Shown: positions 34,775 through 41,400 of the stretch, piece by piece | How the letters are laid out: each line of letters opens with the position of its first letter | How positions within the stretch are numbered: position 1 is the stretch's first letter | Origin: Ostrea edulis | Lineage: Eukaryota | Length of the DNA: 64,000 nucleotides | Assembly: GCF_947568905.1 (NCBI RefSeq) | Contig: NC_079167.1 | Location: forward strand, 15,500,001-15,564,000 | Reading direction: 5' to 3' | Notes under the pieces: model-generated | The model's input: the letters and a program-made list of their open reading frames with translations, nothing else | Databases searched by the model: none | What the model was told of the DNA's origin: nothing | Position numbers and translations under genes: made by a program

Positions 34775-37650
34775 TTTCCACCTCTACCTGTAAGCGGCCA
34801 CCATCAAAATGATGACTATTATGCCACTGTTCGGTATGCACATGTTAAAAACAAATACCGGTATATTGGCGAATGTCTATTTACAGGCGAGTTTAAAAAC
34901 AAACGAAACCAGTGGCTTATTGACGGAGATAAACCTTGAAAGCACAGTTGAGGTGGGTAAGGCATTCCACTCCTTGATGGAACGTGGGTAGAATGATTCC
35001 TTCCTCACTGATGTTCAACATGATGGAATTTGCACTGCCATAATGTTGTTATTCCTGGATGTTCTTTCTTGGATTTTTAGTTTCTCGCTAATGTCAATCT
35101 GAAGTTTATTGTTGATCAGCTTGTACATAACGCAGGGGCTGGATGTCCTTCGCCGCTCTTCTAACGATGGTCATCCAAGCTGATTAAGCATCTCGGTTAC
35201 AGACGAGGTGTTATGGTATCTGTTGTGGACATACCGGAGTGCTCTACACTGAATCATTTCAATCTTTGGAATATCTTACTTTTGATGAGGATTCCAGGCC
35301 GCACTCGCACACTCCACTGTTGGTCATATTAATGATTTATAGGCCTTTTCTTTGATTTTAGAATTGCTGGTGTTGATGTTTCTTTCGAGAAAGCCAATGG
35401 TGCTGTTTGCTTTAGCACAGATGCTATTTATGTGCTGGGTCCATTTCAAGTCTGTCGAGATTGTAACGCCGAGATAATTTGCTGATAGAATATGCTATAA
35501 TTGGTGGTCGTGTAATATGTGGTTCTTCATGATGATTTTCGATTTTTGGTGATGGTAAGCACATTACATTTTTCCGGGTGGAACCGCATGTTTTCCCAGA
35601 TTGCCAGTTGGTTCAGGTCGTCCTGGAGCTTCTCTGCATCTGAAGTGATAGTCATGTATGTCACGGTATCATCAGCAAAGAGTCGTATGGTCGATGAGAG
35701 GCCTTCCGGCATGTCGTTTATGTAAAATAGAAAGAGACTCAGTCCTAGGACAGAACCTTGTGGCACACCGGAGTCCACTGGGACCTCTTAAGATGATCCC
35801 CCCTCCACAACTAGACTTTGCTTGCGGTTTGTAAGGAAGCTTTGGATCCACTGGTTTGTCTTCCCTTTTATTCCATAATGGTTGAGCTTATGAATTAGAA
35901 GATTGTAGCTCACTTTATCAAATGCTTTAGAGAAGTCCATAATAAGGCAGTCAGTCTGTTTTCCCTTGTCGATGTTGATTGAGATATCTTCAATAAACTC
36001 TATGAGTTGAGTTTCACACGAGAGGCCTCTACCGAACCCATGCTGGAGTGGGTACATGATGTTATTGTCATCAGCATGATCTTGCTACGGATGCACGTCA
36101 ATGACACTGGCCTATAATTTACTGCCTCATATTTCTTCCCTTTCTTATATGTAGGGCTAATGTTGGTTGTTTTCCATAAGATGGGTACCTCTCCTGTTTG
36201 GTAAGAGTGATTGAAAATCACAGTAAGGATTGGCGCCAAAACATCTGCTAGTTCTTTAAGGACCCTTGGTGATATAGTATCTGGTCCTGGGGCTTTGGTT
36301 ACATTCAGCCCTTTGAGTAACTTATGGACTCCGTTTACTGTTATGTCTAGGTCTTCAATCCTGGGAAATCCACCCTTCATGTTGCATCGCTTACAAAACT
36401 CCTCAACTGTGATGTCCACTTTTTCCGAGAAGGCTTCCTGAAACTGCTTGTTTAGAATATTTGCCTTGCCTACTGATTCCTGGTGAAGAAGACCGTCCTT
36501 TTTTAAGGATGGTATACTATTACCGTCCGGCTTCCAATGTTTTGATGAAAGTCCAGAAACGTTACTTCTGTTTTGGTTCGCATCATCTGGTTCTGATTTT
36601 ATCATGTTGTCTATATACTTCCAATATGAACGTCGTTTCTCCTGCTGTGTTTTTCGTTTTAGTTCCTTGTAGTTGTTAACATCCTTTATATTTCCTGACC
36701 TTTTCTTTCTCTTATAACATGTGTTCCTTTTTCTTATCAATCTACGGACATCTCGTGTAATCCATGGTTTACTCTCCTTATTCCTGGCTAGCTTTGATGG
36801 TCTATGTTCCTTGATACTTTCTTCCAGTGCCTGTTGAAAATGGTTCCAAAGGTTATTGGTTTTAAGTGCACTGTCCCTCATAGATTCAATGCCAGATGAT
36901 ACTACTTTCATATCTTTCCTGATCTCGTCCCAGTTTGCCTTTCCGTATAATGGTATTTTACAAAGTCGTTGTTGTATTCTAGCTGGCATTACGTCTAGTT
37001 CTACAAATACTTCATCATGATCTGAAATACCAGGCATGGTCTCTACCCTGTTGACAGTCGATGGATGGTTCGTTACCACTAAGTCGAGTGTGTTCGTACC
37101 TCTTGTTGGAGTGACGACCATCTGATATAGTCCAAGGTCATCAAGAGTCTCTATGAATTTATTGTTTATCGTCACATAATGAGTTCCACTTTTAATACTT
37201 TTTGTTTCCCAATTTATTCCAGGCAGATTGAAGTCTCCTGCTGATATAATAACTGCATTGTTTACCCTGCATGATCTTTCCATACTTTTGTAATAACTTA
37301 GGAAGCCTTCTTCATTACTGGTTCTTGGATTGTAGAAGCTAGATAAATAGATTGTACGATGACAGACTAGGTTTAGCATACACCACACCATTTCACACTC
37401 CGTTTCGAATTCAGGCACTGATGAACTGAGATCCTTTTTAACTGCAATGATTACAACTCCTCCGCTAAGATTTCTGTCCTTGAGAAAGGTAGTAAAGCCC
37501 ATCGAGAGAAATTGTGAATCTTTAATAGAGCGGTCAATCCAAGTTTCAGTTCCAAAGATTACATCAGGATTTGTGGTCTCGATAAGGTTGAGTAATTCTC
37601 CCTGTTTTGTTTTAACTGACTTAAAATTAACATTTAAGAGTCATAGATTT
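34775..37650 (-). mobile_element. CR1-group LINE with degenerate APE endonuclease and RT
   Basis: APE motifs VIFGTETW, GDFNLP, NTLDLV and GISDH (36000-37600). RT motifs QHGF, DFSKAFD, GVPQGSVLG and RLFADD (35527-36057). Frameshifts and small deletions; boundaries are approximate. Confidence 0.9.
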
Positions 37651-37843
37651 CCCTTATACTTCCCATTACTGTGGTTTAATACTTTCTTCTACCAAATGGC
37701 ATCACCCATGGTTAACATCAACACCGCCTGGACTAACCGACTTTAGAATTGTTGTGGTGATCTTATCAGTACTGTGATCAATCGTAACTACTCGGCTGTT
37801 TCCGTAACCGACTACGGAAAAGGGCGAGCGCGTGATCCGATTG

Positions 37844-37896
37844 AACTCCGCCAACGCCGGTCCCAAGACCGGGTGCAAGAGGAGGAGGGTTGTGCG
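37844..37896 (+). ncRNA. Twister ribozyme (3' cleavage-product portion) at the RTE 5' end
   Basis: AACTCCGCC AAC GCCGGTCCCAAG(A)CCGG GTGCAAGA GGAGGAGGG matches the twister consensus. P2 is CTCC/GGAG, P4 is CCGG/CCGG, and the CCC/GGG pseudoknot is present. One conserved C is A (37868). Confidence 0.8.
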
Positions 37897-38217
37897 TGAG
37901 GCTAGCTCCCTCACCACGTAAAAAAACACGTTGCTACAGAAACCGAAGCAGCTGATCACACTACGATGTTTTGAGCGGACGAATAGACCCTTTGCTTCAG
38001 CAACATATGAAGAGAAATAGTGAAAGCGAGCAGGAAGCTATTTCTCCGAAATCATCTATATTGTCTCCAAAACGAATTTTAAGAATTGCATGTTGGAATG
38101 TTAGAACTATGTATGAGGCAGGAAAAACGAATCAAGTTGTTAAAGCGATGAATGAATATTCTATCAGCATTCTAGGAATTAGTGAATGTAGATGGACACA
38201 ATCTGGAGAGATTACCC

Positions 38218-38495
38218 ATAACTCAGAACATGTGATATGTTATTCAGGGAGAACTGATAACCCAGGACATGTGATATGTTATTCAGGGAGAACTGATAAC
38301 TCAGGACATGTGATATGTTATTCAGGGAGAACTGATAACTCAGGACATGTGATATGTTATTCAGGGAGAACTGATAACTCAGGACATGTGATATGTTATT
38401 CAGGGAGAACTGATAACTCAGGACATGTGATATGTTATTCAGGGAGAACTGATAACTCAGGACATGTGATATGTTATTCAGGGAGAACTGATAAC
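38218..38495 (+). repeat. 39-bp tandem repeat x7, in frame inside the RTE endonuclease
   Basis: CATGTG at 38229+39n up to 38463. Encodes HVICYSGRTDN seven times, joined by PG/SG. Confidence 0.95.
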
Positions 38496-41400
38496 AACCA
38501 TAAGAATGGAGTTGCAATCATTATGAGTAAAGATGCTAGTAAAGGACTTATCGGTTGGAAACCTATAAACGACAGACTAATAACAGCGAGATTTAATACC
38601 AACTATGGAAAACTGTCCATAATACAGTGCTATGCACCAACAAACGAATATACTGATGAAATGAAAGAGGAGTTTTATAACACATTGATTCTCTTAATCC
38701 AAGAAGTGCCAAAACACGATGTTTTGATGGTAATGGGAGACTTGAATGCTAAAGTTGGGCAAGATAACACTGGATTTGAGAACATTGTGGGAAAAGAAGC
38801 AGTTGGTTTAATCAACGATAACGGTGAACGACTTATAGAAATGTGTGTAACAAACAACCTAGTTATTGGTGGATCATTATTCCAACATAAGAATATACAC
38901 AAGACAACTTGGACATCGCCATCGGGAAGATCACATAATCAGATCGCTCACATCATGATAAACAGCAATTGGAGAACATCCGTCCAAGATGTGAGAGCTA
39001 TGAGAGGTGCTGACGTCTTCAGCGATCACAATTTGTTAGTAGCTAAAATTAAAGTTACAACAAATACCATTAGAAGTCAAGCGATGAAGGAACTAAAGCC
39101 ACCTTAAAGGAAAACTACGCCCCAACAAATAAAAACATTAAGAAAAGTGCACGAGCAGATAAAAATCATTATTTTGAAAGAAAAGCAGAAGAAGCAGATT
39201 ATGCGGCTAGACAAGGAGATCTTAAGACATTGTATAAGATTACTAAGCAGCTATCAGGCAACATACAAAACATGTCATCGTCAGTAAGAGATAAGGATGG
39301 AAAGCAGGTCAGTGGAGAGGAAGAACAGAGGAAAAGATGGAAAGAACATTTTGAAGAAGTTTTAAACAGAGGAACACCCGAAACACTACCAGATCTAAAC
39401 CACATAGAAACAGACGAGATAGAACAACTAGACATTAATCTTGGTGAAATTACAAAACAGGAAATTTGTTTTGCAATCAGAAAACTTAAATCAGGGAAGT
39501 CACCTGGAGTAGATGGAATCACAGCGGAAATGTTGAAAGTTGACGAAGTCTTCAATGCACACATGATGATTGACTTACTTAACACTGTTTGGACAAGTAA
39601 AAAGGTACCATTTGAATGGAAGAAAGGTGTCATCATAAAGCTTCCAAAAAAGGGTGATTTAACATTATGTGGAAATTGGAGAGGAATAACATTACTATCT
39701 GTTCCTGGTAAAATACTCTGTAAAATAATACTCGAAAGACTAAGGGATGCCATTGACCTGAAACTGAGAGAAGAAAAAGCTGGATTTAGAAGAAGTAGAT
39801 CCTGTACATATCATATTTTCACACTCCGTAACATCATTGAACAAGCTTTAGAATGGAGATCTACCATCTATTTAAACTTTGTCGACTTTGGAAATGCGTT
39901 TGACAGTATCCATAGAGAGACATTATGGGAAATCTTGAAATCTTATGGAATTCCAACAAAAATTATTGATATCATCAAGGATATGTATAATGGATATTGC
40001 TGCACAGTGAGACATGAGGGTAAACACTCAGAATGGTTCAACATCACATCTGGAGTAAGACAAGGATGTATCCTTTCTCCCTTTCTGTTCCTGATTACTG
40101 TAGACTGGATAATGAGAAAAATTACTAGAGAAAAAAGAGGTCTGCAATGGACACTTACATCTAGCCTTGAAGATCTTGATTTTGCAGACGATATTTGCCT
40201 CTTATCACACACACACAACCGGATATGCAAAGTAAAACATCTGAATTGCAATCTGAAGCATCAAGATTAGGACTGAAGATAAACTCTAAGAAAACAAAGA
40301 TAATGACAATCAATCCAAAGAACAGAAATACCATCAAGTTAAATGATACTGATTTAGAACAAGTTGAAAACTTCTGCTATCTTGGAAGCACGCTAGCGAA
40401 TAATGGTGACATTGGAGCAGAAGTTAAGATCGGGATAGGAAAGGCAGCGACAGCATTTAAAAGGCTAGATAACATCTGGAAAGCTAGAAGAATTGCAAAG
40501 GAAATTAAGATCAAACTATATAATAGTAATGTAAGAACTGTATTGCTCTATGGAAGTGAAACATGGAAGACAAACAAATTAATAGAATCAAAATTAAGAG
40601 GATTTGAAGGAAGATGTCTCAGAAAAATTCTTAAAGCACAATGGCCACAAATAATTTCAAACAAAGAAGTAGAGGAAAGAACTGGAGTTGGAGACATCAA
40701 TACAGAAATTAAACGGCGACGATGGAGGTGGATAGGGCATGTCCAGAGAATGGAAAGCAACATACATCCAAAAATAGGCTTTAGATGGACACCACAAGGG
40801 CAGAGAAAAGGGGGAAGACCTAAAGGAACTTGGAGAAGAACTGTAGAAGCAGAAATGAAAACAATTGGAATAACAATGGGAGAGGCAGAAAGAAAGGCAC
40901 AAGACAGAGACAGATGGCGAGCAGCTGTGGAAGCCTTATGCACTGACCAGTGTGAAGAGGACTAAGTAAGTAAGTAAGTGATCCGATTGTACAATCTTCA
41001 CCAGAGGGCGTGTTACGCTACGCTACACCACTATTATTAGTGGAGCATAGCGGGAACGATAATTCGGGGGTAGAGATTGCTCATATATTGTACTGTGTCG
41101 AATCATAATGACGTTGAACTATCTATATGACGTCAATGCTTTAAAAAAGGACTATGTGAAGATTCTAAGAATGATTTTATAATCAAATCATCGATATAAT
41201 GAAAATAAGGGATAGCCAAAATGAGAAGAAATTGAAGCTTCTCTTTCTTTTTCTCTTTTCCCCTTTTTTTCATATATTATTGTAATAATTGGTATATGAC
41301 TTAATATACTTAGAATTTTTCTCACTTGTAACATGATATAAGGCTTTTGGCTTGCTTCTCAATTTATTATAATGGACTGTATATAAACATTAATATCAAC

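What the first reader, a model, noticed from the sequence alone, without database searches (positions are those of the whole stretch)
37832..37896. RTE LINE 5' end coincides exactly with the cleavage site of a twister ribozyme
Seen: the 12-bp TSD (37832-37843 and 40978-40989) fixes the first element base at 37844. The sequence from there, AACTCCGCCAACGCCGGTCCCAAGACCGG...GGAGGAGGG, is a twister core starting at the A just 3' of the scissile bond. The 5' strand of P1 and the usual U at -1 are missing and are replaced by target DNA. Established: twister cleaves N^A in L1 and marks the 5' ends of RTE-clade elements in Schistosoma mansoni. Inference: the RNA that made this copy was cut out of a read-through transcript by its own twister, so this is a direct genomic footprint of ribozyme processing in a bivalve LINE. 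The C>A change at 37868 removes a pseudoknot pair and extends P4, so this copy may be inactive.
Basis: partly seen in the sequence, partly recalled or inferred. Interest (0 to 1): 0.75.

Follow-up and report, generated by a model that had tools for sequence, protein, structure and literature searches.

The report
Twister ribozyme heads oyster RTE retrotransposon
A dead 3.1-kb jumping gene (an RTE-type LINE) begins at exactly the base where a small self-cutting RNA, the twister ribozyme, would cut, which repeats in a mollusc (and in a catfish relative I found) the 5'-end trimming already shown for Perere-3 elements of blood flukes; it is a solid new example, not a new mechanism.

Summary
A 12-bp target-site duplication (37832-37843 and 40978-40989) brackets a 3134-bp element (37844-40977). 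It has a broken endonuclease/reverse-transcriptase reading frame and a (TAAG)n tail.

Its first 46 bases are a complete P3-less twister core. They match Rfam twister-P1 at 34 bits, below the 67.2-bit cut-off because P3 and the 5' strand of P1 are absent. Base 37844 is the A just 3' of the scissile bond.

In the genome, 23 of 28 copies from at least five subfamilies start with AAC, AAT or AAG at this position, and their upstream DNA is unrelated. Nine other copies carry exact 11-14 bp duplications that abut the A. Two short internally deleted derivatives do too.

A 51%-identical element in the catfish Hemibagrus guttatus has the same twister head and a 13-bp duplication.

The A at 37868 is a derived change that breaks one of the two T2 pseudoknot pairs.

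The arrangement is already published for Perere-3 in Schistosoma mansoni (PMC8501958), and this scan noted it before elsewhere in this genome (s1-271454). What is new here is the subfamily breadth, the fish case, and a covarying hairpin (37892-37917) that takes up the place of the P1 3' strand.

The parts
37832..37843 (.). 5' copy of the target-site duplication (gtgatccgattg). It is also the terminal 12 bases of an unrelated dispersed repeat.
37844..40977 (+). RTE-type LINE copy, 3134 bp, defective
   Evidence: Duplication and tail. Pfam endonuclease, RVT_1 and DUF6451. Homology to a 1015-aa open frame of a sister subfamily.
37844..37889 (+). Twister ribozyme core of the P3-less type. A37844 is the base 3' of the scissile bond.
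   Evidence: Rfam RF03160 at 34 bits. Alignment and pair counts.
37846..37849 (+). P2 5' strand (CUCC). It pairs with 37881-37884 (GGAG).
   Evidence: 100% of cells paired in 24 sequences. A more distant subfamily has UUCA/UGAG (L070).
37850..37851 (+). L2 GC, the 5' half of pseudoknot T2. It pairs with 37867-37868.
   Evidence: fold description in PMC5408937
37857..37872 (+). P4 stem (37857-60 with 37869-72) and loop 4, which carries the T1 CCC (37862-4) and the T2 bases (37867-8)
   Evidence: Subfamily C inserts an extra U-A pair in P4.
37868..37868 (+). Derived C>A substitution that breaks one of the two T2 pairs
   Evidence: G:C in 20, G:U in 2 and unpaired in 2 of 24 rows. The minimum-free-energy fold extends P4.
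37885..37889 (+). Catalytic G (37885), A (37886) and the T1 3' strand GGG (37887-9)
37892..37917 (+). Conserved 9-bp hairpin (37892-4 and 37896-901 with 37909-17; loop 37902-8). It overlaps the vestigial P1 3' strand (37890-3).
   Evidence: 5 of the 9 pairs show compensatory double changes across subfamilies
37920..37943 (+). Conserved 5'-UTR motifs: an A-run (37920-6) and GCTACAGAAAC (37933-43)
   Evidence: Alignment. The motifs also occur in RTE relatives without a twister.
38007..39107 (+). First piece of the reading frame (endonuclease), running from the first in-frame ATG at 38007. It contains a 39-bp in-frame tandem repeat, 7.1 copies, at 38218-38495.
39057..39077 (+). Site of a deletion of about 267 bp relative to sibling copy L030. 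The reading frame shifts here.
39095..40225 (+). Second piece of the reading frame (reverse transcriptase)
40195..40965 (+). Third piece of the reading frame (RT C-terminal part, DUF6451), reached by a second frame change near 40195-40225
40963..40977 (+). 3' tail (TAAG)n. The stop codon lies in its first unit.
40978..40989 (.). 3' copy of the target-site duplication

Best explanation
Bases 37844-40977 are a retrotransposed, now defective copy of an RTE-type LINE whose RNA carries a P3-less twister ribozyme at its extreme 5' end.

Proposed mechanism:
1. The element is transcribed together with upstream host sequence.
2. The twister folds from element sequence alone (P2, P4 and pseudoknots T1 and T2). 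It needs no P1 partner from the flank.
3. It cuts the N^A bond, leaving an RNA that starts with a 5'-OH at the A.
4. The whole ribozyme stays on the 3' product, so target-primed reverse transcription to the end of that RNA regenerates a complete ribozyme in every new full-length copy. The new copy's first base lies directly against the target-site duplication.

The window copy is dead. It has a roughly 267-bp deletion, two frame changes and a C>A change in T2.

Shown here: the anatomy, the boundaries, conservation across subfamilies and in a fish, and the derived state of 37868. Inferred from published work on Perere-3 and on P1-less twisters: actual cleavage, read-through transcription, and any role in translation.
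For: - Exact 12-bp duplication and a 5' boundary at the A.
- Rfam twister-P1 hit with all core elements in place, and the same hit at 41.7 bits in the catfish relative.
- 23 of 28 genomic copies start AAC, AAT or AAG at this base, with random upstream sequence.
- Exact 11-14 bp duplications abut the A in 9 other copies of subfamilies B and D, in two 293-324 bp deletion derivatives and in the catfish copy.
- The twister core is nearly invariant while the rest of the UTR and the protein diverge.
- Endonuclease, RVT_1 and DUF6451 domains, about 3.13 kb, one reading frame, and the same GTAA-type tail as Perere-3.
- Published evidence: twister variants at Perere-3 5' ends cleave in vitro and in reporter constructs and lie next to target-site duplications (PMC8501958). 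P1 is dispensable.
Against:
- The Rfam score is half the gathering score.
- The 3' strand of L2 is 8 nt, against 5 in the consensus.
- Full-length copies of any LINE share a 5' end, so the pile-up alone does not separate ribozyme cutting from a fixed transcription start.
- RTE-clade membership rests on domain order, size and tail, not on a phylogeny.
Confidence: 0.85

Rival explanations
1. The shared 5' end is a transcription start fixed by an internal promoter. On this reading the twister-like sequence is a conserved structured 5' UTR (for translation or for recognition by the element's protein) that never has anything to cut.
For: - Any LINE family shows coincident 5' ends among full-length copies.
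- No RNA data were obtained here.
- The downstream hairpin and motifs persist in RTE relatives that lack a twister, so the UTR has functions besides cleavage.
Against: - The 5' end falls on exactly the one bond a twister cuts, in every subfamily and in a fish.
- All catalytic and pseudoknot bases are kept, which is hard to explain without catalysis.
- In Perere-3 the homologous motif cleaves, and cleavage is required for reporter expression (PMC8501958).
Confidence: 0.1
2. The match is a chance resemblance or a captured host fragment: a GC-rich 5' UTR that merely looks like a twister, or a single 5' transduction of a host twister by this one copy.
For: The hit is below the Rfam gathering score. 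The genome also holds unrelated twister classes that could in principle be captured.
Against: - The motif heads at least five subfamilies plus a catfish element, with near-invariant core bases.
- The other twister classes in the genome differ in sequence and keep a full P1.
- The control pattern search found 18 matches against 0 for the reversed pattern.
Confidence: 0.02

Closest known systems
T-variant twister ribozymes at the 5' end of Perere-3 (RTE clade) in Schistosoma mansoni (Liu et al. 2021, PMC8501958)
   Same: - The twister sits at the very 5' end of a single-ORF endonuclease/RT element.
- The target-site duplication abuts the AA of the cleavage site, and target DNA stands where the P1 5' strand would be.
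- The 3' end is a GTAA-type repeat.
- Sequence matches too: P2 is CUCC/GGAG, followed by GAGGG and UUG.
   Different: - The host is a mollusc, with a teleost relative, not a flatworm.
- The subfamilies aligned here lack P3, with a 5-nt linker in its place. Two more distant subfamilies in the same genome keep a P3 (L066, L070).
- The 3' strand of L2 is 8 nt instead of 5.
- A covarying hairpin starts 2 nt after T1 and uses the bases that would be the P1 3' strand.
- Cleavage was not tested here.
Oryza sativa Osa-1-4 twister (crystal structure 4OJI) and the 'mini-twister' lacking P1 (reviewed in PMC5408937)
   Same: The P3-less architecture, with a short junction between the L2 GC and P4. About 20% of annotated twisters are of this kind. 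A twister without P1 cleaves off a single nucleotide at nearly wild-type rate, which is the situation of an element whose upstream base is arbitrary.
   Different: Those are free-standing or engineered ribozymes with no retrotransposon context. My sequence comparison with Osa-1-4 is from memory and was not run through a tool.
HDV-like ribozymes at the 5' ends of R2, RTE and L1Tc retrotransposons (Eickbush & Eickbush 2010; Ruminski et al. 2011; cited)
   Same: Same logic. A self-cleaving RNA that stays wholly on the 3' product releases the element RNA from a co-transcript, defines its 5' end, and may help uncapped translation.
   Different: A different ribozyme class and fold. No HDV-like match was found in any locus examined here.

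Membership tests
Twister ribozyme (Rfam RF03160, type P1) | Score at or above the curated gathering threshold of the covariance model | tested here: not met
   34 bits against 67.2. The model expects a P3 stem and a paired P1, and both are absent. Sister copies score 36-49 bits and the catfish copy 41.7.
Twister ribozyme (Rfam RF03160, type P1) | Conserved core nucleotides of L1 and L4 (AA at the cut, the L2 GC, GUCCCAAGC in loop 4, GAGGG) | tested here: met
   All are present in the family. The window copy differs only at 37868 (A for C).
Twister ribozyme (Rfam RF03160, type P1) | Stems P2 and P4 and pseudoknots T1 and T2 can form | tested here: met
   96.1% of cells pair over the 20 scored pairs (the 14 twister pairs plus 6 hairpin pairs), against 36-63% when partners are slid. 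There is little covariation because the bases are invariant. P4 gains a U-A pair in subfamily C, and P2 is UUCA/UGAG in L070.
Twister ribozyme (Rfam RF03160, type P1) | Stem P1 closing the motif | tested here: not met
   The 5' strand is replaced by unrelated target DNA. P1 is experimentally dispensable, so this does not argue against function.
Twister ribozyme (Rfam RF03160, type P1) | Site-specific self-cleavage at N^A | not testable with these tools
Ribozyme-headed RTE LINE of the Perere-3 kind | Target-site duplication directly abutting the A of the cleavage site, with the ribozyme wholly inside the element | tested here: met
   Seen in the window copy, 9 other copies, 2 short derivatives and the catfish copy.
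RTE clade of non-LTR retrotransposons | One reading frame with an N-terminal AP-type endonuclease then RT, no ORF1, about 3.2 kb, and a short tandem-repeat 3' tail instead of poly(A) | tested here: met
   Pfam Exo_endo_phos, RVT_1 and DUF6451. Copies are 3128-3160 bp with (TAAG)n or (AAGTC)n tails. One copy has a 1015-aa open frame.
RTE clade of non-LTR retrotransposons | Placement inside the RTE clade in an RT phylogeny with reference elements, including Perere-3 | not tested
   No reference clade sequences were available by reference. The nearest named relatives are unannotated proteins of gastropods, Lingula, a catfish and Haemonchus.

The most novel reading that the evidence does not exclude
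In these elements the twister is one part of a conserved 5' module of about 100 nt (twister, a 2-nt linker, a covarying 9-bp hairpin, an A-run, then GCUACAGAAAC) that is shared by mollusc and fish RTEs.

The hairpin starts where the P1 3' strand would be. It may stack under T1 as a built-in substitute for P1. That would make cleavage independent of whatever target DNA lies upstream. The module as a whole may also recruit ribosomes to the uncapped 5'-OH RNA.

Relatives in Lingula and in an unidentified organism keep the hairpin part without a recognisable twister. That suggests ribozyme heads have been gained, lost or swapped on an older UTR.
Probability: 0.25. Interest if true: 0.6.

Novelty: new member of a known kind. 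Interest (0 to 1): 0.42.

Why it matters
The only published biological role for eukaryotic twisters is 5' processing of Perere-3 in one flatworm. Finding the same arrangement, bounded by target-site duplications, in several oyster RTE subfamilies and in a catfish suggests that the link is a general property of a branch of RTE elements, either old or spread between aquatic animals, and not a schistosome oddity.

It also has a practical consequence. Many of the twisters predicted in animal genomes, which lack P1 and score below Rfam thresholds, are probably LINE heads. A P3-less, P1-less model would annotate both the ribozymes and the true 5' ends of these elements.

The covarying hairpin that replaces the P1 3' strand is a concrete hypothesis about how such ribozymes stay active at any insertion site, and it can be tested.

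Tried and rejected
- The whole-window Rfam scan at gathering threshold gave nothing. The hit appears only with E-value thresholds on a short stretch.
- The minimum-free-energy fold of the region is no more stable than shuffles (z = 0.18). RNAalifold puts the twister part into a shifted nested fold because it cannot model pseudoknots. I therefore scored the published twister fold directly.
I did not try to reach reads by another route.
- Empty-site test: the upstream flank is the end of a dispersed repeat, and its copies mostly diverge right after ...ccgattg. Only one paralogue (L076) continues into the window's downstream flank, and it does so with about 19 extra bases. This supports the insertion boundaries only partly.
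- Supplementary tables of the two twister papers are not held as text. I could not check whether these oyster or catfish sequences were already listed or assayed.
- RTE relatives from Lingula (L051) and from an unidentified ENA sample (L052, L053) showed no twister or other Rfam ribozyme within 1.5 kb upstream. One Logan contig (L055) lacks the head. Two ENA contigs were too large to fetch, and one protein was not on record.
- A Logan contig that starts 1 nt before the A (L056) was not counted as RNA-end evidence, because assembly graphs break at repeat borders anyway.
- I did not build a full-length consensus or a mended version of the element.
- I did not verify the host species.

Full report
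**1. What is at the coordinates**

The window reads gtgatccgattg at 37832-37843 and again at 40978-40989. The second copy follows directly on a (TAAG)n run at 40963-40977. The first two bases of the duplication could belong to that run, so the duplication is 10-12 bp. The 5' boundary has no such ambiguity: the element starts at 37844 and is 3134 bp long.

The reading frame is in three pieces:
- an endonuclease piece, from the ATG at 38007 to the stop at 39105-7
- a reverse-transcriptase piece, about 39095-40225
- a C-terminal piece with DUF6451, 40195-40965

Against a sibling copy the window copy lacks about 267 bp at 39057-39077, which shifts the frame. It changes frame again near 40195-40225. 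It also carries a 39-bp in-frame tandem repeat, 7.1 copies, at 38218-38495. It is a dead copy.

**2. The twister**

At Rfam's gathering threshold the window has no match. A sensitive scan of 37780-37960 gives twister-P1 (RF03160) at 37839-37893, 34 bits, E = 4.1e-6. A genome-wide run gives the same hit E = 0.005 per genome. The score is half the 67.2-bit cut-off because the model expects a P3 stem and a paired P1, and both are missing. The core aligns at posterior probabilities of about 1.

Using the published description of the fold (PMC5408937), the parts are:

| Part | Coordinates |
|---|---|
| AA at the cut | 37844-5 |
| P2 | 37846-9 with 37881-4 |
| L2 GC (T2 partner) | 37850-1 |
| 5-nt linker in place of P3 | 37852-6 |
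| P4 | 37857-60 with 37869-72 |
| T1 | CCC 37862-4 with GGG 37887-9 |
| T2 | G37867 and position 37868, with C37851 and G37850 |
| Catalytic G | 37885 |

Exactly two As precede P2. The base at -1 is G, and the four bases before it cannot make a P1 with UUGU (37890-3).

**3. Is the boundary a family property?**

A search of the whole genome with the first 300 bases found 28 further matches, representing 27 independent loci. I lined them up on the query's first base.
- 23 of 28 copies (window included) start AAC, AAT or AAG at that position.
- Four differ or stop within the first three bases, and one is truncated by 12 bases.
- None continues upstream.
- Mean pairwise identity of the 40 upstream bases is 28.9%, the value expected from their composition. 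For the first 48 element bases it is 79%.
- The -1 base is T 11, A 8, G 7, C 2, which is the background. There is no preference for U.

The copies fall into at least five subfamilies, 75-98% identical to the window copy over the first 100 bases.

I fetched 5.6 kb for 20 of them and searched for duplications.
- Nine further copies, from subfamilies B and D, have exact duplications of 11-14 bp. These end at -1 and recur directly after a (TAAG)n or (AAGTC)n tail.
- Copy lengths are mostly 3128-3160 bp. Three are longer, probably through later insertions.
- One further copy has only an 8-bp match, which I did not count.
- Two short elements of 293 and 324 bp consist only of the first ~170 bases joined to the last ~130-155 bases. 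They carry 17- and 12-bp duplications. So the head plus the tail can apparently be mobilised.

**4. Conservation and structure**

I aligned 24 heads: 21 from this genome, a catfish copy, an ENA contig and a Logan contig (alignment A1). The bases of P2, T1, T2 and most of P4 are invariant or nearly so. Scoring the published twister fold plus a downstream hairpin gives 96.1% of cells paired, against 36-63% when the 3' partners are slid by 1-3 columns.

Within the twister there is little covariation because the bases do not change.
- Subfamily C adds a U-A pair to P4 and has G:U in T2.
- A more distant subfamily (L070) has P2 as UUCA/UGAG.

The hairpin is different. At 37892-4 and 37896-901 paired with 37909-17, five of its nine pairs show compensatory double changes, for example U-A to C-G in 11 sequences and G-C to A-U or U-A in 10. 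It begins two bases after the T1 strand and uses G37892 and U37893, which a canonical twister would use for the P1 3' strand.

Beyond it lie an A-run (37920-6) and GCTACAGAAAC (37933-43), both conserved in all subfamilies.

**5. Position 37868**

In the alignment the T2 pair G:C is kept in 20 rows, is G:U in 2 and is broken in 2, one of which is the window copy. All four complete siblings of subfamily A have C. The A is therefore derived.

T2 has only two pairs. The large assay of natural twisters found the pseudoknots and the catalytic bases to be the elements least tolerant of imperfections. P1, P2, L2 insertions and the absence of auxiliary stems were tolerated (PMC11662667). The predicted fold of this copy extends P4 to six pairs using the new A, which would compete with T1 and T2.

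Reduced activity is a reasonable expectation but is untested. It says nothing about the RNA that made this copy, because that RNA came from another locus.

**6. What kind of element, and where else**

A sister-subfamily copy has a 1015-aa open frame with endonuclease, RVT_1 and DUF6451. Its relatives are mostly unnamed proteins on contigs of about 3.2-3.9 kb. Named ones come from gastropods (Batillaria, Nucella), the brachiopod Lingula, the catfish Hemibagrus guttatus and the nematode Haemonchus.

The catfish locus (GCA_033459405.1, a 24-Mb scaffold; protein 51% identical) has all of these:
- the same P3-less twister, 41.7 bits
- the hairpin and the GCTAC(A/G)GAAAC motif
- a 13-bp duplication abutting the A-run of the cut site
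- a length of 3145 bp

An ENA metagenome contig (protein 91% identical) and a Logan contig of subfamily-B type are also twister-headed.

Copies from Lingula and from an unidentified ENA sample keep the hairpin and the motif but show no twister or any other Rfam ribozyme.

Single reading frame, size and GTAA-type tail fit the RTE clade and match what is described for Perere-3. I did not run a phylogeny.

**7. How it most likely works**

The published case supplies the mechanism. In S. mansoni, twister variants sit at Perere-3 5' ends. They cleave in vitro and in reporter constructs, they are co-transcribed with the element, and they lie next to target-site duplications that stand in for the P1 5' strand (PMC8501958). 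A twister without P1 removes a single nucleotide at nearly wild-type rate.

Because cleavage is at the 5' edge of everything the ribozyme needs, the 3' product keeps a whole ribozyme. Reverse transcription to its end recreates the ribozyme at each new site.

The data here show the genomic footprint of that cycle many times over. They do not show the chemistry. The main rival is a fixed transcription start with a non-catalytic structured UTR. It cannot be excluded without RNA data, but it does not explain why the end falls on the one cleavable bond, nor why the catalytic bases are kept.

**8. Novelty**

The arrangement is published for one flatworm. As recently as November 2026 a review-style introduction cites only that paper for the link between twisters and retrotransposons. 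Bivalves are listed among groups with predicted twisters, without LINE context.

This scan had already reached the same reading for another piece of this genome (s1-271454).

I therefore rate it a new member of a known kind.

**9. Limits**

- There are no RNA reads.
- The host species was not verified by me.
- The comparison with the rice twister sequence is from memory.
- The supplements of the two key papers were not available as text.

Noticed in passing
L057, L058, L060, L061 (G000 C7:5945704, C7:18019282, C5:56231534, C10:44093459); L059, L062, L063, L069; L064, L065, L067: The genome holds at least three other twister classes with a complete P1 (CTTT/AAAG, GTAG/CTAC, AAAC/GTTT), some with a P3, scoring up to 61.6 bits. 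They have conserved sequence upstream of the cut site and no RTE reading frame within 4 kb downstream. They belong to other repeats, of unknown kind.
   Followed up: partly
L033:101-393 and L034:101-424 (G000 C6:42796443, C4:45354037); also L032: These are short internally deleted derivatives of 293-324 bp, made of the twister head plus UTR (about 170 nt) joined to the last 130-155 nt of the element. They carry 17- and 12-bp target-site duplications. Head and tail therefore seem sufficient for mobilisation in trans. Only 2-3 such copies were found.
   Followed up: partly
L050:1269-4413 (Hemibagrus guttatus, GCA_033459405.1): The catfish RTE head is 79-92% identical to the oyster twister heads over the first 52 alignment columns, while the proteins are about 51% identical. 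This reflects either strong constraint or horizontal transfer among aquatic animals. I did not try to tell the two apart.
   Followed up: partly
L051:~1380-1460 (Lingula anatina) and L052:~1340-1412 (ENA ERZ26858540): These RTE relatives keep the hairpin, the A-run and the (G/T)(C/T)TACAGAAAC motif upstream of the reading frame, but have no recognisable twister or other Rfam ribozyme.
   Followed up: partly
L066 and L070 (G000 C3:26328851, C5:16667612): More distant RTE-type heads in the same genome carry a P3 stem, as the Schistosoma variants do, followed by the same kind of hairpin. L070 has a covarying P2 (UUCA/UGAG) and RTE homology downstream.
   Followed up: partly
window 38218-38495: A 39-bp (13-codon) in-frame tandem repeat, 7.1 copies at 98% identity, lies inside the N-terminal part of the reading frame. 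The sibling copy L030 has fewer units.
   Followed up: partly
window 37778-37843: The 66 bases upstream of the insertion are the terminal part of a dispersed repeat (418 first-look candidates for the 284-base upstream query; the listed copies of this part are 88-94% identical). That repeat ends exactly at ...gtgatccgattg, so the RTE duplicated the last 12 bases of another repeat.
   Followed up: partly
window 37560-37677: A second, different repeat (about 117 bases, 90-93% identical copies on C4, C6 and C9) lies further upstream of the insertion.
   Followed up: no
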